Counted from the first letter of the whole stretch, positions 29,385 through 42,312 are shown. The stretch: 61,674 bases of DNA, filler included, from Dugesia japonica (GCA_001938525.1; 6 parts of 6 records of this genome joined end to end with filler, not necessarily neighbours in it); one strand, 5' to 3'. Numbers and translations: made by a program. Notes: a model not told the origin generated them from the sequence alone.

Positions 29385-29423
<39 letters not shown>

Positions 29424-30429
29424 CTGTTACTAAAGTAGATAGACATTGGGGGATGCTATTAACTTCCTTAAGATTTTTTAAGAATAAGCAGCTGAGAAAT
29501 TGATTGGCCGAAAAATGTGTGCGCATTTTTAAAATATTTTATTGGCGCAAATTTGTTAAACTCAAGTAGCCCATAATTCTTTTGGTCGAAAATTTGATTA
29601 TGCATTTTGGAGGAGGTAATATAATGGTATAAACTGAAAACAAAATTGTTATTGAAACAATGTATGAGAAAATGTTTCAGGGTCAACCAAGAACGGATCC
29701 ACAGGAGAGCGATGGGGGCAATCTCCTCCATAACTGGATTTTGAAAAAGATATAAAATTATAAGGAGTACTCACGAGAATATAAGGATAGTAGTATGAGA
29801 AAGTAAAGATGAAATAATTAAAAACAATTCTGTATCAAAAAGTCGCAATGAAAAACATAAAATTATTGTAGAATAAAAATAAAGTATATAGATAGTGGGG
29901 CACTAAACTACATACCCAGATTACAAAGTGGTTTAGAAATTCGGTTTGAAATTTCGGTTTAGTAATTTAGAATATATATATAATGTAGAAATTTTAAATA
30001 CTAAAAATGATAAATTAAATAAATTTTATTAAAAAAATTAACCTCATATAGAAATTGTACTTGTTTGTTTTTTATTGTTATTTTCATATATTTCCTCGGA
30101 ATGTGTTTTGGTGATTTTCTTCTAGAGTTATTCTTACTCAGCATAAAATTCTCTATTGAATAAATGGGTTGATGATAAAATTAGAAATACTATTTATTTT
30201 TTGAAAAATCTATGGAATATTGAGAAAATCAAAAATACCCCCATTAAATTCTTGGTATAAAAGCATTTAAAATATGAGCATCAAAATTATTTTTGAAAAC
30301 CTTGAACTGTTAACTCAGATTACAATGACAATTTGAATTATTTGTAAAAAATTTGGTTTATTGTGAAAGTTGCTTTTTTGGTAATTATTCACTTTTTTAA
30401 AATTTTAAAATTTTTCAAATTAGAATTTA

Positions 30430-31670
30430 TGTTAATGGGTTTTATACACACTAAAACGCATCTTTTATACAGGAAACAAATGGGTCATATACATAAAAAG
30501 CTAATATGTATTATACACACTATAAACCCTATGTGTCTTATACACACTATAAACCTGATTGACCTAATACACGATAAAAATTGGGTTTTATACACGGAAA
30601 ACTAATTGAATTTTATACACAAATAGAACCAATGATTATCATTCACACAAAAAACACAATGGGTCCTATACATAGAAAACCAATATGATTTTATATATGG
30701 AATAATCCCAATAGGGCACAATACACACTATAAACCAAATATAATTATTATAAAGCCCAATGGGTCTTATACACATTATAAGCCCAATGGATATTTATAC
30801 TAAGGTAATTCAATGGGTTTTGTGATTTTTATAAGAAAACCAATTGAATTTATACACATAGAGTATTATATATACCATAAACACAATGAGACTTATATAT
30901 AGAAAACCAATGGATCTGATACACACGTTAATCCAATAAAGTTATATAATATACACGATAAACCAAATTGACTCATATATGTATAGATGAAACCAATGAA
31001 TATTATTCATAAACACACAATACAACCAATTAATTCATTAAATACACGCAAATAACCTAATAGAGTCAGCAAATACATTCAATAAACCATAAATTGCGCA
31101 CAAGTAATCCAATAGGGTAACAAAATATAAACTATAAATACAATAGAAAGATATAATACATAAAAATTGTGCTATAAAATTATATAATACACATATTAAC
31201 TCATATAGAGTCAAATAATACAAATAATTAAACCCAATAAAGTAATTACATACATACAATAAACCTAGTAGAGTTATATAATACACATAATAAACCTAAT
31301 ATGGTAATGTAATACATACAGTCAATCTAATAGGTTCTTATAACACAAGCGATTAGCTCTTTAAAGTCAAATTATGCATTTACTATACCCAATAAAGGTA
31401 TATATTGCATCCATGAAATTTGATGATGATATACAACACACTCACGAAAGTCAATAAAGCCACCTAATTACACACAATAAACTTAATAGAGTCGTATAAT
31501 ACACATTAAAATTATCTAATCTGTCTTATAAACATACGAAATACATTCAATAAAGTCATATAATAAGCCTAATAATAACATTAAATACATACAAAAACCT
31601 CAATAAAACCATTAAAATACACGCACAATAAATCCAACAGTGTCTTATAATATACATTAAACCTTATAGT
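30430..31670. repeat. Degenerate minisatellite array, unit about 27-30 bp (AAACCAATGGGTCTTATACACACTAT-like)
   Basis: Dozens of diverged atacac...aaaccaat units. Confidence 0.85.
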
Positions 31671-31880
31671 TATTAAATATATAGATGTTGACAAATGTTT
31701 TCAAAAATGACATAGAAGTCTCTGGAAATATAAGAAAGCACTTTTATGTGTTCATTTTAATTAGATTTGGCATGTGCAACACGAATGCGACATAAATATT
31801 GTTAGATGCGTTTGAAGTACTCACCGGATCATAAAAAACATTAATAATCGAATATCATATAATAAATTCACAATATATAT

Positions 31881-32941
31881 TTAGTATTGAACATTCAAAT
31901 GCTTACAGAATATAACTAAACGTTTTATCTATTAAAAGCGGTTTTAAAAAATTGAAAATAATTATTTTGAAATATTTTACCTTGGCTTTATACAAATTCA
32001 TTATAGATTCATTGATCTGATTTTGATTATCTTCAGACAGTAAAAAGTCAGTATAATATTTTTTTACTTTCTTTGTTTGGTCACCAAATTTGATCTTACT
32101 AATTATTTTCTAGAATACTTGTTTATAAAATAAATACTTGCTAATAAAATTGCTTTAATATTATCATAGTGAAGTAATTTTAATTGATCTTGAGATATTT
32201 TACAATCCATATTAAAATCCAATACGATTTGGGTTGGATCATGGTTCTTAATTTTTAACATTCTTTTATTGATTGGATCAATACATGAATTCTTTATATG
32301 ATTTTCTATTAATATAATTATGTTCTTTTTAATGTTTTCTTCCATTTGAAAAATCATTAGCGAAGCATTTTCCTTTTTACATTTTCCATCATGTTTATCA
32401 ATTATTTCAAGTATTTTCTTAAATATTGTATTTTTTTGAATATTTTCTTCACTTTTTTCAATGCATCGTCTAACATAATTCAAAAACTTTGAATATTCCA
32501 CGTCAGAATCATTTATTTCAACTTTCATTTTATCAACAGTTTCTAAAATTGTTATTCTGAAAATAAAATAATGAATGTTTGTTTGGATAAATTTTAATTT
32601 AATATAATTAATTTAATAATTATACTTTTTCTTTTGTTCCTGCCACACAAATTCACCCACACATTTACTATATTTATTTAATTCATCTAATAATATTGAT
32701 TGGACATTTAAAAATCTCGTAAAAGCTACATTTTTATGAACCTAAGTGTTGTGGTTCATAATAAAAGAACTATTATTTTTTTTACCAATATATCTGCTTT
32801 CAGTCGAGAAAAGTCTTCAAATTGATTCGGGTTCAAAGCTGAAATAAAATATAATGGGTCGGTATTTACTCCAAGACTTCTAAAATATTTTTCTCCAAAT
32901 AATCCTTTGAAATCAGTTCTCAATTTAGTTTTTTTTTCATC
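31881..32941 (-). CDS. Unidentified multi-exon host gene, 3' part: exons 32941-32786, 32741-32626, 32556-32142, 32109-31981, 31928-31881
   Basis: GT-AG introns 32742-32785, 32557-32625 and 31929-31980 splice in phase into and after ORF 32103-32528; the last two exons require a GC-AG intron at 32110-32141. 5' part unresolved. Confidence 0.6.
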
Positions 32942-32989
32942 CTAAAATAATAAAAATCGTGATAAAATTGATACATTTTTAAAGATTTT

Positions 32990-35900
32990 AGTAGATAGAT
33001 ATGAGTAGATAGATATGATAGATAAATTATTAAGTCCAAAACCATTAATTTCATTATTATCAAGACTAAACCCTAAAAAGGAATATAAATTTAGGTGTGT
33101 ATACATATATGAATTTGATTGGGTAATGGAAGTTTAAAATAATTGAATAAATCTTTATAAAAATAGCTTTAATTTTAATACTCATCTCATTAAAATGGAA
33201 ACCACCATACATTCATTAAACCTATACATTCGATTCATTTACGTATTTGACTTAAATATTGTATTCAATGCTGTCATTTATCTTAATCTACTCGTTCAAG
33301 TTAAGCCATACAGTCGCCGTATCCATTAAATATGCTTGATTTGTCCCATTAGACATGGATCAATAAGCAAAAGTCACTATTTTCATTAAAATAAACACTA
33401 AGCTGATTATAATATTTACTGATGGTTAACATTATTTTAAAGTCATAATCAATTTCATCTTACAACTAATGATACAGGTAATCAAATTATATAGTTATTT
33501 AAAACTTTTTCAAGGTAAATACCGTAAATTAGTCCAATAATCAATGAACACAGCAAAGTTTGTATGTGCCTGTATATGCGAAGTTAATGGATAGAGTAAG
33601 CAAATAAGTACAGTAACCTAATATGATGGAGTGAAACCAATGGAATACTGTAAAATCAATGAATATAGTAAGCATGTTAGTACAGTAAGCTAATGTGATA
33701 AAGTAAACCCCAAGTATTACGGTAAACTAATGTGTAGCAGTGAAACTGATGGTCCTAGTAAAGTCCATGTGCTACAGATAAAACCAGTGTAATATAGTAG
33801 GTCAATGAATATCACACATAGTACCTGATCGAATCCAATCGTTCAAGTAAATTATTTGAATTATTACTAATTTATCAATTGAACATACATCAATTTCAAT
33901 CCTTTATACACTGATTTCATTAGACCATGAATATATTGTTGTCGCCTAAAAGCAAATTGTTACCACTTGTGTATTAATTACGACCATCGATGTGTAATCT
34001 ACTGACATCTATCCACAAATCATGGTCACCTATGAGCAAATTATCACGGCCCCATGTGTAAAATATCAAACTATGTACAAAAGATCGAATGTTATGACTA
34101 AATTATAACCAATATGAATAGATTATAGTCACATGTAAGCAAATTGTAACCATCTATTGTACATTAAAACATTAGTTTGAACTTTTTCAAGTCTACAGTT
34201 TATTTGAATAACTTTATTTTATAAAATTTCTATAGATATACACAAAATATATACTAAGTCTATAAGAAATTCCATTAAAATTTATGGACTCCTTAATTAA
34301 AATAAATTAACTTTATAAAGATTTATTAAATTTCCATTAAGCTCAGTAAAGTTAATTAAATTAAATTAACTTTACTAAATTTCATCGAATATTATATGTT
34401 TAATAGACTTATAGTATTCATTAAATGTACTATATTGTCTTTGTTTCGTAGAGTTCATCCGTTTTATTTAAACAGTAGACCAATGGATATAGTAAAATCA
34501 TAGAATGCAATGCAATAGTATAGACAAATTTATTAAATTTCCATTAATTTCATTAATTTATAAATTTTACAGAGTTTAGCAAGGGGTATAGAAAAACCAG
34601 TAAATATAGCAAACAAGTGGATAAAGTAAGCAAACGGGTATAGAAAACCGATTTAATACAGTAAAACCCATGACTTTCAGTAAATCAATAGAAAAAGTAA
34701 GCCAATGTGACACAGTACGCCCATGTATTTCAATAAAGCTAATGCGTCACAGTAACGCTAATGTATTTCAATAAAGTCAATGGATACAGTAAAACCCATG
34801 TGTTTCAATGAAGCCAATGTGACACAGTAAGCCCATGTATTTTAATAATGCTAACGTGACACAGTAAAACCCTTGTATTTCAGTAAACCTGTGTGACACT
34901 GTAAAGCCTACATGCTACAGTAAAGCCAATGGACATAGTAAATCAATGTGTTTCAAAAAAACCATTGTAACACATTAAAGCCCACGTGTTACGGAAAAAA
35001 CCAAAGTGAAATAGTAAGCCTATGTGATAAAGTAAACAAATAGTTTTAGTAAGCAAATGAATACAGTAAGTTAGTAGATATAGTAAAGTAGTGGACATTG
35101 TAAATCAATGAACACCAATTAACACCATTCATAGATAGTATTTTGACATAGTATATGCTGAAATCATTCAATTTAAGTAAATTATTTAATTTATTACAAT
35201 AATTTAATTTAATTTTAGTCTATAAATCTAATCTAACTTAATTATGTTTAGAAAATATGTACTATTAAGAAAAACTATTTGAAATATAATAAGTCTTTAA
35301 ATTTATGTTTTTATTTTGCAAATTTATAAATTTTTGAAAATTAAAATTTTACACGTGTTACCATAGCAGTATTTTAATGGTTTTAATTTTTTATCAATGT
35401 AATATTATTATTTTCAGTTTTTACAGTTTTTCAATGTAAATAGTTTGTAAAACGTTTAACGTTTATTTTCAAAAGTAAATCAAAATTTTTATTATAAAAT
35501 CTTTAAGATTCGACATTTACTCGACAAATCATGAATTTCAAATAAAAATCTAAACTTTGAAATTTAATAACAATAAATTAAAATTAACACTTGAAATAAT
35601 ATTATTAGAATGAAGCATTTTTATACAGTAAACCCTATATAAAAAATGTTCAGTTTTTTAATCTGAGTTTTACGGTCTCAAAATACTTTAAAAATTAATA
35701 TTATTTTAATTATAATTTAGAATTAATTATATAATTAAATATTATTTTGAGAAGCAAGCATATTTGTACAATACGCCCTATGAGAAATATGTTTAGTTTT
35801 TAATTCTGAGTTTAGCAATGCCAAATTTGTTTGATTATTCTAAGTATTTTCCTGAAAAGATAATTTTCTATCCAAGGTGGGACATGCATATTACTCGGTC

Positions 35901-36686
35901 ATTTTCTATCGTAGGAATCAAGCATATTTTTACAGCAAACCCCACACAAAATATGTTCAGAATTCTATTTTGAATTGAATGCTATCATTTAAATATCTAT
36001 ACGATAAGTATCGGTTGAGAAGTTCATGGATCAATGTCTACAGTGCCAGTGCGCTCATACCTTTTTCCTGGAAACTAAAAATATTCATATAGCAAATCAT
36101 ATAAAAAATATGTTCAGATTTTAATTCTGAATTTAAAAATATCCATTTTGTTATTTTATCATAAGTATTTCTCGAAAAAATAATTTTTCATCTTCAGTGA
36201 GACATGGCACCTGGGTATTTTTATCTTTTGAACTAAAAATAGTTTATCAACAAACCCTGCACAAAACTTGTTTGGAATTTTATTCTGAATTGAATGCTAT
36301 TATTTTCATTGCAACACAATAAGTATTGATTGAGTAATTCATAAAACAAGGTCAACAGTGCCAGTGCGCTCATATCTTTTCTCAGAGAACCAAGCATATT
36401 CATATAGCAAACCCTATATGAAAAATGTTAACCTTTCAATTCTAAGACGATCAATACTAAATTCGAAATAACACAATAAAATTAGACCGAAAAATTTGGT
36501 TTCAAAAATTCGAATTTTCGACCTTCCTGAGCAAAATCTCGACCGTTCCAACCCGAATTCAAATTTTTTTTCATATATTCAGAACGTCATCATTTATTCA
36601 GAACATCAAAACAACCCAAACAGTCGACGGCGGGGTGGATAGGGGGCGAGGGAGGTTCTATGCCAGTGCGCTCATATCAATCTATT
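32990..36686. mobile_element. Non-coding AGTAGATA-terminated element, copy B, both ends present (about 3.7 kb)
   Basis: Left AGTAGATAGATATGAG; right CTCATATCAATCTATT (14/16 inverted match). Interior: roughly 20-bp minisatellites and about 310-bp tandem units; no ORF in the track. Confidence 0.7.
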
Positions 36687-37133
36687 GAACTTGTTACGTA
36701 GAATGCTATATCAATATTAATAAAATATAAGATTGTTCTCAATTAAATAAAAATAGAAGCCAATTTTTTACTAAAATAGCAAAAATTTTATACACTAGTC
36801 TATTATGCGATAAACAAACAAAATTGTGTGGTAATTTAACTTAAATTTCTTTTATCTGACTAAAGAAATCATTCAATTAATTAAACATAATTGAGAGAAA
36901 AATAAATCAGATTGTAGATTTGTAGCAGAACTTCTTCAGAAACAAAATCAATTAAAATAGTAAAAAATAAATACAATGTGATATTTGTAAGTCATTAAAT
37001 TTAGAAGCTATACGTAGTTTAATTAAAATTGATCATAATTAACATAATATGTTTTACAAAAAGCATTATTTATGGTCCTTCGGAAGATTGCTATTGATTC
37101 CTTTTTTCATTTCCTTATTTAAACTTTATTAAT

Positions 37134-37802
37134 AGTGAGAGAGATAAATGCATACGTACCAGAACAGTTGCAAATATTTTCTATGACTTCTACGAAATTT
37201 CATAAACTTTTTATCGACTTCTATGCAATTTTAAAATTATTAGGTTGTAAACTAAGTTTTTGCAGTAAGACAAGAAATATTTAATATATTCTATTTATAT
37301 ATTTGTAAGTAATATANNNNNNNNNNNNNNNNNNNNNNNNNNNNNNNNNNNNNNNNNNNTAATAATATATATATGTAATCTATAAAAAAAATTAAAAATC
37401 AGTACAAGTTTATTATATTACAATATAATACAAATGATATCATTGTAAACAAAACATCCCGGAACCTTAATCGAAATATGCACCATCAAAACCAATGACT
37501 TTCTGCTATTTTTCCGGCAACAAATCTATCCTATTGCAATTTCCATGTGACTGCATACTTTCCCATTGTTTAACACTGGATTTTGAAGACTTTATCGACT
37601 TCTATGCATTTTATAATTATTGATTTCGTTTCAATTTTTTAAAAATATCTTTTAACTTCTATGTATTTTCATAAAATAATTATTGATTTCTTTTCAATTT
37701 TATAAAAATATTTAGTGACGTCTATACAATTTCTAAATATTTTGTGATATTTCTTTGTAAAAAAAATTTGCAACTCTTCTGGTACGTATGTATTTATCTA
37801 CT
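37134..37802. mobile_element. MITE-sized element with about 40-bp TIRs and an AGTAGATA-type end
   Basis: Left ...AGATAAATGCATACGTACCAGAACAGTTGCAAAT; right ATTTGCAACTCTTCTGGTACGTATGTATTTATCTACT; internal GACTTCTATGCAATTTT repeats; mariner-like fragment nested from about 37238. Confidence 0.8.
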
Positions 37803-38117
37803 AATAAGTTTTCTGCCCTCTCAACCATGCATCTTTATCTTTTATAACATTATTGGTTACATAAACACTTAGTAAATACAACTTATTATTTAGGATATAC
37901 TATATATTCTATCTATATATTTTATCTATTTTCTTTTTTCATGTAACCTATATTTAAATTTTTAAAACGTGCGATAATCACCGTACATACTTCATAATGT
38001 AAAAAACAATAGGTGTCAATTTCCATAGCTTAATATAAACAATGAATATTGTGGAAGTTCACCTATATAAACCACATATGAACAATCATATAAACAACAA
38101 TATTGCATGGGAAGCTA

Positions 38118-38680
38118 AGTAGATAAACTGTGACGCATGAACCGATCCTCTCCCCCTGTCGCTTAACATGGAATGAAATTTGACCTTGGCTCCAATTTAT
38201 TGACTTCACCTTTGGCCTATGAAAAAATAAGACCGAGCTTGACGGGCTTGACCTTTGACCTAATGCGTATATCTCAAATTGTTTTAATTTAATAAACCAA
38301 AATGAATGAAAATAAACTAGGCTGAACTTTGACCTGGTGCTGAAATTTATTTGTTTGTACTTTTAAGTGATTCTGAATTATTGTTACTATTTATAAGTAG
38401 CCCAGTATACTCGATTGTGATTGGTTCAGAGCTTGTTACTATTTCTAAGTGGTATCGTATAATTTATTGACATAGGTTAATTTATGCGCGCGATCTTTTA
38501 TTCAAACCATATAATTAATTTGAATATTTTGTTTAAATAAATCAGGTTTATTAAAATATACTGGTCTTACCTTTGACCAAGTGCCGAAACTTACTAGTTT
38601 TTACTTTTTTGGAGTTGCCAAATTAAAATTACTATTTATAAGTGTCCCATTATATTTAATTGTAATTGATTAAAATATGT
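38118..38680 (+). repeat. AGTAGATA-starting repeat rich in TTTGACC motifs; related in reverse to about 21180-21310
   Basis: AGTAGATAAACTG...CCCCCTGTCG...TGACCTTTGACC...TAGGCTGAACTTTGAC; 21180-21310 has GTCAAAGTTCAGCCTA and CGACAGGGGG. Confidence 0.55.
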
Positions 38681-38782
38681 GAGTAATAATCAAGCGTAAT
38701 AGTGAAAGGCTATTAAGAATTAAATAATTTAAGCTTTTCCCGCCCAAAATTTTGATAGGATAAATAGAAAATAACATAAAAA

Positions 38783-38979
38783 ATTAAGGAACATTTGAAA
38801 CAAAACGAAAGTAAAGTCCTCAAGCACTTTCAACACAAATATACAATTTAACGAGGAACAACATCACCCAACATAGAAAACACTAGTAACAGGCTACATT
38901 TCTACACTTCATATAAAAGCATGAAGAAATACTAATTAAAAAAGACAATCCTAAAATCTATGTAATTTATAATAATTAA
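38783..38979 (+). pseudogene. Second Penelope-like GIY-YIG 3' fragment
   Basis: IKEHLKQNESKVLKHFQHK...TGYISTLH...EILIKKDNPKIYVIYNN*; aligns with 688-894. Confidence 0.8.
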
Positions 38980-39329
38980 ACTTTTAAAAGAAATTAACCA
39001 ATTAACCAATTAAAATTTAGTAAAAATAAATTATTTCAAAAAAAAAATACTGTAGTAAAACTAAATATTGAATAAATCAAAAAAGTCAATTTCTGACAAA
39101 GGCAGAGTCGAAAATTAGAATTATTATCAAAATAAAAAAATAAATTTTGATTGAAGGATTTATTTATTTTAATGAATTCATTAAGAATTTAGATCAAAAA
39201 ACAATATTTTAATTGAATAAACAATATAATTTAATTGTATGTTTCCATTTTATCAATTGTGTTTTTACTTTATATTTCAATATTGTAAATTGGAATTGCG
39301 CTTGTTTATTATTACAAATAGCAATATTT

Positions 39330-41160
39330 TTATTATGTTAATGTTTTGTTACTTTTTCAATGTAATTTTATTATTATTTTAAATTTTTCAGTATAAATAG
39401 TTTGTTAAGATTTTAACACTTATTTCTAAAAGTAAATCAAAATTTATCTTATAATTCATTAAAATAAATTAAAATTAAAACATGAAATAAACAATATTCA
39501 GACGGAAGCATTAGTCTATAAGTCCTTTAGACGACGTATAGGTATTCTATATTTTAATGGTTTAAAAATAATAATATGATGTTATTATATTTATAAATAT
39601 AGTCAATAATTATATATATTATTTCGAGAACCAAGTATAATTAAAAAGTAAAGTTTTTGCCACTTATGTTTTGTTTTTAATTTAAGACGACTATTGCAAA
39701 TTCGAAACGATATGATAAAAATTGGCTGAGAAATGTCTAAACCAATTTCAATATGGTTAAAAACGCTGCACCTATTTCCTAGAGAGCGATGTATATTTTG
39801 AGAATAGTAAAATTACTATCAAAATTCCTTTAGAGACTTTAATTTTGAGTTGAATTTTAAAAAGAATAATATTTTAAAAACTACTATTAATTAGTTAAAG
39901 TTATAATTTATAGATAATTATATAATTATTTATTATTTTCTGAACGAAAAATTTATATTCAGTAAACGCTACATGAAATATGTTCAGTTTTTATTCTGAG
40001 TTAAATGATACCTGATTATAATAAGTACATCCAGAGTAAATGATTTCTTTAATACAAGGTGGTATATGTTATCCTACAATTTTCTATCTTGGGATCTAAG
40101 CATATCTTTACAAAAAACTATATATAAATGATGTTTGTAATTTTTGTCTGAATTCAATGATACTATATACGAAGCCATGCAATATAGTTTGGTCGAGAAA
40201 ATGATAAAACAAATCAAAGTGGCTCAGTGCTGCACATCCTTTTTCAAGAGAATCAAACTTATTTATACAGTAAACCCAATCAGTGTTTAGTTTTCAATTA
40301 TAAGGAAAGTAGTACTAAATTTAAAACCAAGCGACTAATTTCGATCAAAAAAATCTAAATTCAAAGTTTGGAAATCTAATTTTTTCATATTATTTCAACA
40401 AATTCGACGTTTCCGACAGATTTCTATTAAATATTCAACCTAAACAGACTACAATTGGTAAAATATGTCTAAAACGATTCCAAACTGACAATGCTGAAGA
40501 AATTACCGATTAAAATAAGTGAAAAGTGCTTTAAATTAATGAAGACAAGTTAAATATCACCGAAAACTGACCGATATAAGTAGAAAATTGACTACTTATC
40601 TAAAAAATTGAACTTTGTGAGCAAAGTAATAAATTATTATTAATGATGCAAGAATGTCTAAAAATGCATCGAAACAGACTGTGCCGAAAAACGTCTTACC
40701 AAATAGCTCTAAAATTAAACTTCCATGGAAAAAATTTGACTATGGCAAGTGGAATCTAACCAACCGCAGGAAAAAATTGACAAAGTCACTCAAAGGTTAT
40801 TCATAACCGACTATCTTGGGAACGAAGCATATTTGTACAGCAACCACTAAATGAAATAAGTTCAAGATTTTATTCATAATCAAATGATACCATATACAAA
40901 ACGATATCATAAGTTTTGACCGATGAAATTATAAAACAATCCAAAGGGGATCAATGCTGCACACCGTTTTCCAAAAGAACCAAACATATTTATACAGCAA
41001 ACCATATACAAACAGTGTTCAGCTTTTAATTCTAAGGCAATTGTTTTCAAATTCGAAATCATACAATACAAATTGACCAAAAAAATTAAAGTTAAAATTT
41101 TGAAATTCGACCTTACAGAGCAAATATTTTGATCATTTCGACCTAAATACAAAATAACTT
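39330..41160. repeat. Diverged copy of the AGTAGATA-element body
   Basis: 39370-40330 and 40820-41150 repeat motifs of 35400-36550 (aaatagtttgt, aaagtaaatcaaaattt, atgttcagtttt..attctga, caaggtgg, aagcatatt). Confidence 0.65.
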
Positions 41161-41405
41161 TCTTATCAAAATTCGACCAATGAAATCATTAGAAAGTTTG
41201 TTGGTGTAGGAGATAGCTAAGTTGTGACGTATCTCACCACTCTTGAACGAAGTAAAATTTAACAGGTTCCCGCTGAACATCAAATAAATTCAGGTAAAAG
41301 ATTATGAAAGAACAAGCATCATGAATTATGATCATCGTTTCTGATAACAAAGACGCTCAAAACTCAACTATCTTTGTAGTATTGAACATGACTTAAGTCT
41401 TCAAG

Positions 41406-41470
41406 AGTAGATAGATAGTAGCAGTAATAGCCAGCACACATTCAGTAGAACCCCCCCCCGCCCCCTATAC
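41406..41470 (+). mobile_element. Another AGTAGATAGATA terminus with the GC-rich subterminal motif
   Basis: AGTAGATAGATAG...TAGAACCCCCCCCCGCCCCCTAT matches the reverse complement of 36639-36661 (TAGAACCTCCCTCGCCCCCTAT). Confidence 0.65.
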
Positions 41471-42312
41471 GTAATCGGATTATTACATAACTGTTTTTAA
41501 ATTTTTCTAATGTAAATAGGCGTTACATAATGTAATTAATCTTATCGCAAGAATTATTATATAAGTGGCTATACATTTTCTTGAATATTTAGTTGGGAAT
41601 ATTTTTTGGCTTTTTAAGCGGCAAAGTGGCTATGGATTTTTTCCGTGTATTTAGTTAGGACAGTTTTTTCCGGCTTTTTAAGCGGTAATATTTTTCAGGC
41701 TTTTTAGTTGGGAATTTGCTCCGTGAGGTCGACAAGGTTGTATTTTGATTGGTTTAAAGTGGTTTTTGTCGAAAAATTTCTCGGTGAAGTGGAATAAGGT
41801 TGATCTTTCGTTGATCCAGGTGAATTTGATCTAATTTTTTCTCAGGATTGGTTAGATTGAGTAATTTTTGGGTGATTGGGTCAATTTTAGTTCAGCTTTG
41901 GTCAGTTTAGGTAATCTTTGGACGATTTGGTCAATTTTTGGTTGATTCAGATGATTAATCCTGATAACGCTTAATCGACACAAATAAAAAGTTATTTTTT
42001 ATAATTCTCATCCAAAATTAATGATCCAATTACTAATAGATAGAGAATTGTTTAATGATCAAGAATATATACGGTAGAAATTTTTCAAATTAGATTACCT
42101 TGAAAAAAGTTAACATTTTTATTTCTCAATAAATAATTAAAAATAAAATTTATCTCAAATTTAATTACAATCCAATCTATTTGTTAAAGAATTCTACACT
42201 GATTACAAATATATTAATCTAAAATCGCCAAATCTTAAAAATAAAAAGTTTTATTGAAAAACAAGCACATCATTTGGGAGTCCTCAATGAATATAAAAAT
42301 AAGATGATAATT

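What the first reader, a model, noticed from the sequence alone, without database searches (positions are those of the whole stretch)
32990..36686. Family of non-coding, satellite-filled elements with AGTAGATA termini: candidate non-autonomous Polintons
Seen: this 3.7-kb block has inverted AGTAGATAGATATGAG ends and no ORF. An inverted copy on another scaffold starts at the same terminus (6058, AGTAGGTAGATATAAGCGCACTAGCAT) in different flanking DNA. Related termini occur at 29434, 37802 (reverse), 38118 and 41406. Known: Polinton/Maverick ends begin 5'-AG with short tandem repeats, and they make 5-6 bp target duplications. Inference: these are gene-less elements copied in trans by Polinton pPolB and integrase, whose remnants are in this window, and they carry minisatellites around the genome. 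Flanks GATTTT/GAACTT match only 4/6, so a target duplication is not shown.
Basis: partly seen in the sequence, partly recalled or inferred. Interest (0 to 1): 0.78.

Follow-up and report, generated by a model that had tools for sequence, protein, structure and literature searches.

The report
Decayed gene-less repeat block, shared ends
A 3.7-kb stretch of non-coding, repeat-filled DNA in an AT-rich eukaryotic genome carries end sequences that recur nearby, so it is probably an old, dead, gene-less transposon relic, but nothing here ties it to Polinton/Maverick elements.

Summary
The block 32990-36686 is real non-coding DNA. It has no ORF over 56 aa and no Pfam hit, and about 46% of it is tandem arrays. 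Its "inverted ends" are weak. The left end is exact, but the right end matches only 14/16, and half of that match belongs to a motif that recurs in the block's own ~315-nt satellite. Inverted pairs of that quality are common in this DNA. There is no target duplication (4/6, p=0.08).

AGTAGATA occurs 7 times against 0.43 expected. It forms the outer tip of a clean 0.66-kb MITE-like element with a 42-nt inverted repeat. Three tip-bearing ends (36686-, 38118+, 41406+) also share a C-rich box 20-55 nt inward, and their flanks are unrelated. A 1.2-kb satellite module of the block has a diverged second copy at 39334-41166, but that homology stops short of both claimed ends.

Best reading: a relic of a local family of non-autonomous inverted-repeat DNA elements whose interiors are filled by tandem arrays. 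The superfamily is unresolved. The Polinton link rests only on an AGTAG start. Inverted-repeat length and target duplication do not support it, and no autonomous partner could be examined. No outside copies could be retrieved. This is an ordinary kind of feature and of moderate-to-low interest.

The parts
32990..33024 (+). Left end of the block: a 14-nt unit starting AGTAGATA, 2.6 tandem copies. Only the tip is shared with other ends; there is no C-rich box.
33581..33810 (+). Tandem array with 72-nt period and 18-nt sub-period; related to the array at 34611-35104.
   Evidence: (D8, D12)
34611..35104 (+). Minisatellite with 37-nt period (18-19-nt sub-period) and higher-order periods of 75 and 112 nt. 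It contains the internal AGTAGATA hit at 35073.
   Evidence: (D4, D8)
35105..35593 (.). Very AT-rich spacer (17-24% GC). Its right part (35370-35497) is 78% identical to 39334-39454.
35594..36678 (+). Satellite with a basic unit of about 150 nt, spaced at 143, 321, 315 and 302 nt. An 18-nt motif recurs exactly at 36044, 36359 and 36661.
   Evidence: (D1, D2, D7, D19)
35370..36576 (+). Module present twice in the piece: collinear with 39334-41166 at 68-78% identity. The homology stops 110 nt before the right end and 2.4 kb after the left end.
36618..36686 (-). Right end of the block: a degenerate tip (14/16 to the left end) plus a G-rich box on the plus strand. It is homologous to the end at 41406-41496, and the similarity stops at the tip.
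37134..37802 (.). MITE-like element: 42-nt inverted repeat at 90%, whose right arm starts with the exact tip. The interior holds 31/63-nt tandem units. It contains the N gap 37317-37359, left as it is.
   Evidence: (I1)
38118..38162 (+). Third tip-bearing end with the C-rich box, followed by a pair of 244-nt repeats.
39334..41166 (+). Second, diverged copy of the satellite module, with a longer unit spacing of 727 nt.
   Evidence: (D1, D2, D11)
41406..41496 (+). Tip-bearing end with the C-rich box, inverted relative to 36618-36686. The element it would begin runs off the piece or is truncated.
29434..29449 (+). Tip-only occurrence next to a (TTATCA)n microsatellite. A G5 run lies 14 nt inward, and a 13/16 direct near-copy sits at 29883.

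Best explanation
The block is a decayed, gene-less relic of a DNA transposon with terminal inverted repeats. It may also be a composite built around one such relic. It belongs to a small local family whose ends carry the tip AGTAGATA followed by GA or AA. In three of the ends a C-rich box follows 20-55 nt further in.

Such an element cannot move by itself. When it was active, an enzyme encoded elsewhere would have recognised its ends and inserted it. The interior was later taken over by locally amplified tandem arrays (18/37-nt, 72-nt and ~150/315-nt units), which now make up about half of it.

**Shown:** the enrichment of the tip. The tip's position as the outer end of a clean 42-nt inverted repeat. 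Homology among three ends that stops at the tip while flanks and interiors differ. The absence of coding capacity. The arrays themselves.

**Inferred:** that 32990 and 36686 are the two ends of one insertion. That the unit was mobilised in trans. Which enzyme family did it: the superfamily is unresolved, and Polinton integrase is one candidate among several.
For: - Tip enrichment is 7 against 0.43 expected.
- The 16-mer of the left end has only 0.17 expected matches at up to 3 mismatches, yet it hits 36686(-) and 41406(+) at 2 mismatches and 29434(+) at 3.
- The MITE-like element 37134-37802 has its tip at the outer edge of a 42-nt, 90% inverted repeat.
- The end at 36686 and the end at 41406 align beyond the tip: 0/200 and 0/300 shuffles reach the score. 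Their flanks beyond the tips are unrelated (205/300).
- Positions 11-60 inward of the ends at 36686, 38118 and 41406 are mutually similar, p about 0.01-0.025 against random segments.
- The heptamers CCCCTAT and CCCCTGT together occur only three times in the piece, each 33-56 nt inward of one of these tips and in the same orientation to it.
- Interiors next to these ends are unrelated, as expected for non-autonomous families that share only their ends.
- No ORF or Pfam domain is present.
Against: - The block's own inverted repeat is only 14/16, and pairs of that quality are at background level.
- The left end lacks the C-rich box carried by the right end.
- No target duplication is seen.
- The only interior sequence found twice (35370-36576 and 39334-41166) ends well inside the proposed borders. 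Its second copy is followed by a tip in the opposite orientation.
- Six of the seven exact tips are on the plus strand, and no plus-strand tip other than 32990 has an inverted partner in the piece.
- There are no copies from elsewhere in the genome, so mobility itself is not shown.
Confidence: 0.45

Rival explanations
1. The block is not a unit. The region is a mosaic of old tandem arrays, segmental duplicates and isolated (solo) ends of small inverted-repeat elements. The 14/16 inverted match between 32990 and 36686 is coincidental. The left 'end' is merely a 14-nt micro-array that happens to contain the tip motif.
For: - Inverted pairs of the same quality are abundant.
- Half of the right 'end' is a satellite motif.
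- The left end shares nothing but the tip with any other end.
- The module homology does not match the borders.
- There is no target duplication.
Against: - The right end is independently shown to be a true family end by its homology to 41406-41496, which stops at the tip.
- The left end is a 12/12 match to the tip at 41406.
- A given 16-mer has only about a 3% chance of an inverted partner of this quality in range.
Confidence: 0.3
2. The units are non-autonomous Polinton/Maverick derivatives, inserted by a Polinton integrase and copied by its protein-primed polymerase acting on the AG-initiated, reiterated ends.
For: - The tip starts AGTAG, close to the (AGT)2 end motif reported for vertebrate Mavericks (PMC8097293).
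- The first 12 nt have a 4-nt reiteration, seen directly in the sequence.
- The ends with the C-rich box are about 45-90 nt long, at the low end of published Maverick inverted-repeat lengths.
- Two 6-bp flank comparisons give 4/6 each.
Against: - A 5-nt resemblance is weak evidence.
- The block's own inverted repeat is 16 nt.
- 4/6 is at chance level (p=0.08 each), and the second case depends on how the left tip of the MITE-like element is placed.
- No polymerase, integrase or capsid remnant is found in any stop-free stretch tested in this piece.
- No autonomous partner could be examined.
Confidence: 0.15
3. The tips mark the starts of head-to-tail units of about 3.3-3.7 kb (29434, 32990, 38118, 41406). 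These would have been produced by tandem or segmental duplication, or by a rolling-circle type element, rather than by independent inverted-repeat insertions.
For: - Six of seven exact tips are on the plus strand.
- Spacings are 3556, 3697 (to 36686) and 3288 nt.
- The units starting at 32990 and 38118 both carry the satellite module in the same orientation in their right halves.
Against: - The units starting at 29434 and 41406 share no interior with the others.
- The ends at 36686 and 37802 are inverted.
- The tips do not show the Helitron-type 5'-TC / 3'-CTRR ends, read directly from the sequence.
- A strand bias in five to seven sites is not significant.
Confidence: 0.1

Closest known systems
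Miniature or non-autonomous terminal-inverted-repeat DNA transposons whose interiors are tandem repeats (for example the foldback-type element Tetris of Drosophila virilis, PMC4079207, and tandem-repeat families tied to mobile elements in Tribolium, PMC4675708)
   Same: Non-coding. Ends are conserved while interiors differ. Interiors are built of tandem units, including a nucleosome-sized unit of about 150 nt. The small element at 37134-37802 has a clean 42-nt inverted repeat enclosing a 31/63-nt array.
   Different: The arrays here are not part of long inverted arms as in foldback elements. No characteristic target duplication is seen, and no autonomous partner or superfamily is known. The 3.7-kb block has only a 16-nt imperfect inverted repeat.
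Polinton/Maverick elements and their gene-poor derivatives
   Same: The ends start with AG, specifically AGTAG, which resembles the published (AGT)2 end motif (PMC8097293). The first 12 nt show short reiteration.
   Different: No perfect 6-bp duplication. The block's inverted repeats are far shorter. There is no polymerase, integrase or capsid gene remnant in the piece, and no demonstrated sharing of ends with a coding element.
Ordinary satellite or minisatellite DNA in AT-rich, gene-poor regions
   Same: About half of the block, and much of the whole 12.9-kb piece, is tandem arrays of several unrelated periods at 65-85% unit identity.
   Different: Plain arrays do not explain the enriched tip, the conserved subterminal box at three ends, or the sharp stop of similarity at the tips.

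Membership tests
Polinton/Maverick (non-autonomous derivative) | End motif 5'-AG.../...CT-3', e.g. (AGT)2//(ACT)2 or (AG)3//(CT)3 (PMC8097293) | tested here: inconclusive
   The left tip starts AGTAGA, 5/6 to (AGT)2. The right end of the block ends ...CTATT rather than ...ACT. A 5-nt agreement has little weight.
Polinton/Maverick (non-autonomous derivative) | Terminal inverted repeats of tens to hundreds of bp (46-1447 bp in the vertebrate survey) | tested here: not met
   Block: 16 nt at 14/16, with nothing further inward. Three other ends share about 45-90 nt, but no element in the piece carries two of them.
Polinton/Maverick (non-autonomous derivative) | 6-bp target site duplication | tested here: inconclusive
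   Block: GATTTT against GAACTT, 4/6. MITE-like element: 4/6 only if the left tip is set at 37134, and 1/6 if set at 37139. Background P(>=4/6)=0.08.
Polinton/Maverick (non-autonomous derivative) | Ends shared with an autonomous element encoding protein-primed polymerase and integrase in the same genome | not testable with these tools
   The rest of the genome is not available. The piece holds no such gene. Pattern scans of the public collections gave only chance hits.
Non-autonomous terminal-inverted-repeat (cut-and-paste type) DNA transposon / MITE | Terminal inverted repeats bounding a non-coding body | tested here: met
   Clearly met for 37134-37802 (42 nt, 90%, I1; 0/200 shuffles). Only weakly met for 32990-36686 (14/16).
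Non-autonomous terminal-inverted-repeat (cut-and-paste type) DNA transposon / MITE | Several copies with conserved ends in unrelated flanks | tested here: met
   Within the piece only. The ends at 36686, 38118 and 41406 share tip plus C-rich box, while their flanks and adjacent interiors are unrelated.
Non-autonomous terminal-inverted-repeat (cut-and-paste type) DNA transposon / MITE | Target duplication of a superfamily-specific length (TA, TTAA, TWA, 3, 8, 9 bp ...) | tested here: inconclusive
   No length from 2 to 10 bp gives a convincing match for the block. The MITE-like element has AAT/AAT (3/3) under one placement of its left tip.
Helitron / rolling-circle elements | 5'-TC and 3'-CTRR ends, no inverted repeats, insertion between A and T | tested here: not met
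   The tips read AGTAGATA... and their complements end ...TATCTACT. Inverted ends are present.
Satellite / minisatellite DNA | Head-to-tail arrays of a repeat unit | tested here: met
   Arrays of period 14, 18/37/75/112, 72 and about 150/315 nt lie within the block. They cover about 46% of it.

The most novel reading that the evidence does not exclude
The AGTAGATA-tipped units are gene-less parasites of Polinton/Maverick elements. Under this reading they keep only the ends that the integrase and protein-primed polymerase recognise, and their spread seeds new satellite arrays around the genome.
Probability: 0.12. Interest if true: 0.6.

Novelty: new member of a known kind. Interest (0 to 1): 0.3.

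Why it matters
If the ends prove to be shared with coding Polintons of the same genome, this would be a documented case of MITE-like hitch-hikers on a virus-like self-synthesising element. It would also be a route by which such elements spread satellite DNA. On the present evidence it is one more decayed non-autonomous DNA element family in a repeat-rich, AT-rich region. It is useful for repeat annotation of that genome but not surprising.

Tried and rejected
**Outside copies**
- A 22-nt degenerate search pattern taken from the two aligned ends (N at the two differing positions, no majority letters chosen) gave 0 hits in viral contigs.
- The same pattern hit three identical 38.7%-GC metagenome contigs with no tip nearby. 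These are chance hits.
- The inverted-repeat pattern of the MITE-like element gave 0 hits in viral and in prokaryotic genome contigs.
- The 19-nt satellite motif gave 0 viral hits and 4 bacterial chance hits.
- The 14-nt tip gave more than 118 single, internal hits in viral contigs, none at a contig end. These are chance hits.

**Identifying the organism or the neighbouring gene**
- No Pfam hit.
- No word-search hit.
- No hit among 1.84 billion representative proteins.
- Seven ORFs of the piece are not in the protein collection.

**Alternative structures**
- Alternative geometry: one 4.8-kb element from 36618 to 41496, with the tips as the inner edges of its inverted repeats. Rejected because in the MITE-like element the tip is the outer edge, and because the tip recurs in unrelated contexts.
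- Helitron reading: rejected on end sequences.
- Homology of the left 2.4 kb of the block to 38118-39333, to 41406-42312 or to 29434-31700: none above shuffles.
- Relatedness of the array at 30430-31660 to the arrays of the block: not significant. Both arrays do carry CCAATG on the plus strand.
- Rfam and tRNA scans: nothing.

Full report
**Scope**

Only the piece 29385-42312 was used. The N run 37317-37359 was left as it is. The piece is about 25% G+C. It looks eukaryotic, with short GT..AG introns in a neighbouring gene, and it is not human-like. Consensus lines printed by the tandem-repeat and alignment tools were not used.

**The observation**

- The left end is as described. Bases 32990-33005 read AGTAGATAGATATGAG and open a 14-nt tandem repeat of 2.6 copies.
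- The right end (36671-36686, minus strand) matches at 14/16.
- Two facts weaken this 'inverted repeat'.
  - Bases 36661-36678 repeat exactly a motif found at 36044 and 36359, one per ~315-nt satellite unit. So 8 of the 16 positions belong to the satellite, not to a dedicated terminus.
  - Inverted 16-mer pairs with at most 2 mismatches, 0.5-6 kb apart, occupy 442 window positions in this piece (184-281 in dinucleotide shuffles). 78 of those positions have at least 4 G/C in the arm.
- The flanks give 4/6 for a 6-bp duplication, background P=0.08, and nothing better for 2-10 bp.
- The block has no ORF over 56 aa. Its longest stop-free run is 75 codons, about the chance expectation for this composition. 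No Pfam match passes cut-off.
- Tandem arrays cover about 46% of the block:
  - 33581-33810, period 72/18 nt;
  - 34611-35104, period 37 nt with higher orders;
  - 35594-36678, units of about 150 nt spaced 143/321/315/302 nt;
  - several small arrays.

**What is real about the termini**

- AGTAGATA occurs 7 times against 0.43 expected.
- The hit at 33004 is the tandem copy of 32990. The hit at 35073 lies inside a 17-nt minisatellite.
- The remaining sites are 29434+, 32990+, 37802-, 38118+ and 41406+, plus the degenerate 36686-.
- The clearest case is 37134-37802. It has a 42-nt inverted repeat at 90% (I1; 0/200 shuffles). Its right arm begins with the exact tip. Its left arm has the tip disturbed by a short AG-type run. 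Its interior is a 31/63-nt tandem array.
- In that element the tip is the outer edge of the inverted repeat. This fixes the polarity for the other sites.
- An alignment of eight tip-bearing ends shows that only about the first 12 nt are common to all.

**A sub-family of ends**

- The ends at 36686(-), 38118(+) and 41406(+) share more than the tip.
- The segment 36639-36672 aligns with the reverse complement of 41433-41468 (score 16; shuffle maximum 11; 0/300). With gaps the similarity runs from about 36618 to the tip and from the tip to about 41496.
- Similarity does not continue into the flanks beyond the tips (205/300 shuffles do as well).
- Positions 11-60 inward of the three tips are mutually similar, p about 0.01-0.025 against random segments of the piece.
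- Runs of five or more C or G are rare here: 7 in the piece, 4 of them within 15-55 nt of a tip.
- The heptamers CCCCTAT and CCCCTGT together occur only three times, each 33-56 nt inward of one of these tips and in the same orientation relative to it.
- The DNA just inside these ends is otherwise unrelated.
- Conserved ends with unrelated interiors and flanks are what a family of non-autonomous inverted-repeat elements, or their solo ends, looks like.
- The left end of the block (32990) and the site at 29434 share only the tip.

**The interior module**

- The segment 35370-36576 is collinear with 39334-41166 at 68-78% identity.
- The homology stops at 36576/41166, 110 nt before the right end. 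It does not resume (269/300 shuffles do as well).
- The left 2.4 kb of the block has no counterpart at 38118-39333 or elsewhere. So the only sequence present twice is not co-extensive with the proposed element.
- One tidy model: two same-orientation copies of one family.
  - Copy 1 is 32990-36686, whose right end carries the C-rich box.
  - Copy 2 begins at 38118, whose left end carries the C-rich box. Its right end is cut by a third copy that begins at 41406.
- That model fits the module orientation, but it rests on three ends and cannot be tested in 12.9 kb.

**How it most likely works**

I take the block to be a dead, gene-less inverted-repeat DNA element, or a composite around one. It would once have been inserted by an enzyme supplied in trans that recognised the tip and subterminal box. 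Its interior has since been remodelled by local tandem amplification. My confidence is 0.45 that 32990 and 36686 are the two ends of one insertion. It is somewhat higher, about 0.6, that the tips are transposon termini at all.

The main rival (0.30) is that the block is not a unit and that the left 'end' is a coincidental micro-array. The Polinton reading (0.15) has one published feature in its favour: vertebrate Mavericks carry (AGT)2//(ACT)2 or (AG)3//(CT)3 end motifs, inverted repeats of 46-1447 bp and perfect 6-bp duplications (PMC8097293). The AGTAG start agrees with that end motif. Inverted-repeat length and duplication do not, and the partner could not be examined. A head-to-tail or rolling-circle reading (0.10) is prompted by the plus-strand bias of the tips. 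It fails on end sequences and on the two inverted ends.

**Comparison with known kinds**

Non-coding inverted-repeat elements with tandem-repeat interiors, and satellites that grow out of them, are well described (for example Tetris, PMC4079207, and tandem-repeat families in Tribolium, PMC4675708). I found almost nothing on gene-less Polinton derivatives in the paper library. One paper notes only that Tlr1 elements have sometimes been viewed as non-autonomous Polintons (PMC5499653). From my own recollection, unverified here, Repbase lists some non-autonomous Polintons. At best this is a new member of a known kind.

**Surroundings**

- Immediately left of the block, on the minus strand, lies a spliced gene fragment.
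  - Exons: 32786-32941, 32626-32741 and 32103-32556.
  - Introns: 44 and 69 nt, both GT..AG, with the reading frame kept across both junctions.
- The fragment has no start codon. Any 5' exon would lie to the right, across the block, which would then sit in an intron or upstream region.
- The longest exon has no homologue by Pfam, by word search or among 1.84 billion representatives.
- I searched the exons separately by reference and left out the search of the joined model.

**Limits**

No copy from elsewhere in the genome could be retrieved. All collection scans gave nothing or chance hits. The ORFs of the piece are not in the protein collection. Mobility, target duplication and the partner enzyme therefore remain untested.

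Noticed in passing
window 32103-32941 (minus strand): 5'-incomplete spliced gene fragment of three exons (32786-32941, 32626-32741, 32103-32556), with 44- and 69-nt GT..AG introns and the frame kept across both junctions. The second acceptor reads TTTTCAG. There is no homologue in any search, so it is an orphan or unannotated gene. Its missing 5' exon(s) would lie beyond the 3.7-kb block.
   Followed up: partly
window 37134-37802: Best-defined mobile-looking element of the piece: 42-nt inverted repeat at 90%, tip AGTAGATAAA at its right end, interior of 31/63-nt tandem units, and an assembly gap at 37317-37359. The flanks give AAT/AAT (3 bp) or 4/6 (6 bp), depending on where the left tip is placed.
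   Followed up: partly
window 29434, 32990, 33004, 35073, 38118, 41406 (plus strand) vs 37802 (minus strand): Six of the seven exact AGTAGATA hits are on the plus strand. Spacings between the plus-strand tips are about 3.3-3.6 kb. The cause is unexplained and the sample is too small to test.
   Followed up: partly
window 30430-31660: 1.2-kb minisatellite (27/31/62-nt periods) with strong C-over-G and A-over-T skew. Like the arrays at 33581-35104, it carries CCAATG almost only on the plus strand (12 against 1 in the piece). The arrays do not align significantly with each other.
   Followed up: partly
window 38306-38426 and 38550-38671; 41563-41688: Further local repeats just inside the tips at 38118 and 41406: a 244-nt-spaced pair at 74% identity and a 61-nt tandem pair at 78%. 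The region 41400-42000 has a marked G-over-C and T-over-A skew, unlike the rest of the piece.
   Followed up: no
window 29385-29423 and 29883-29898: A (TTATCA)n/(TTA)n microsatellite abuts the tip at 29434. A 13/16 direct near-copy of that tip region lies 449 nt downstream at 29883.
   Followed up: no
L001:1233-1254, L002:1918-1939, L003:3393-3414: Three metagenome contigs (38.7% GC, identical around the match) contain the C-rich 22-mer, immediately followed by its G-rich inverted complement. No tip is nearby. This is an unrelated chance hit.
   Followed up: yes
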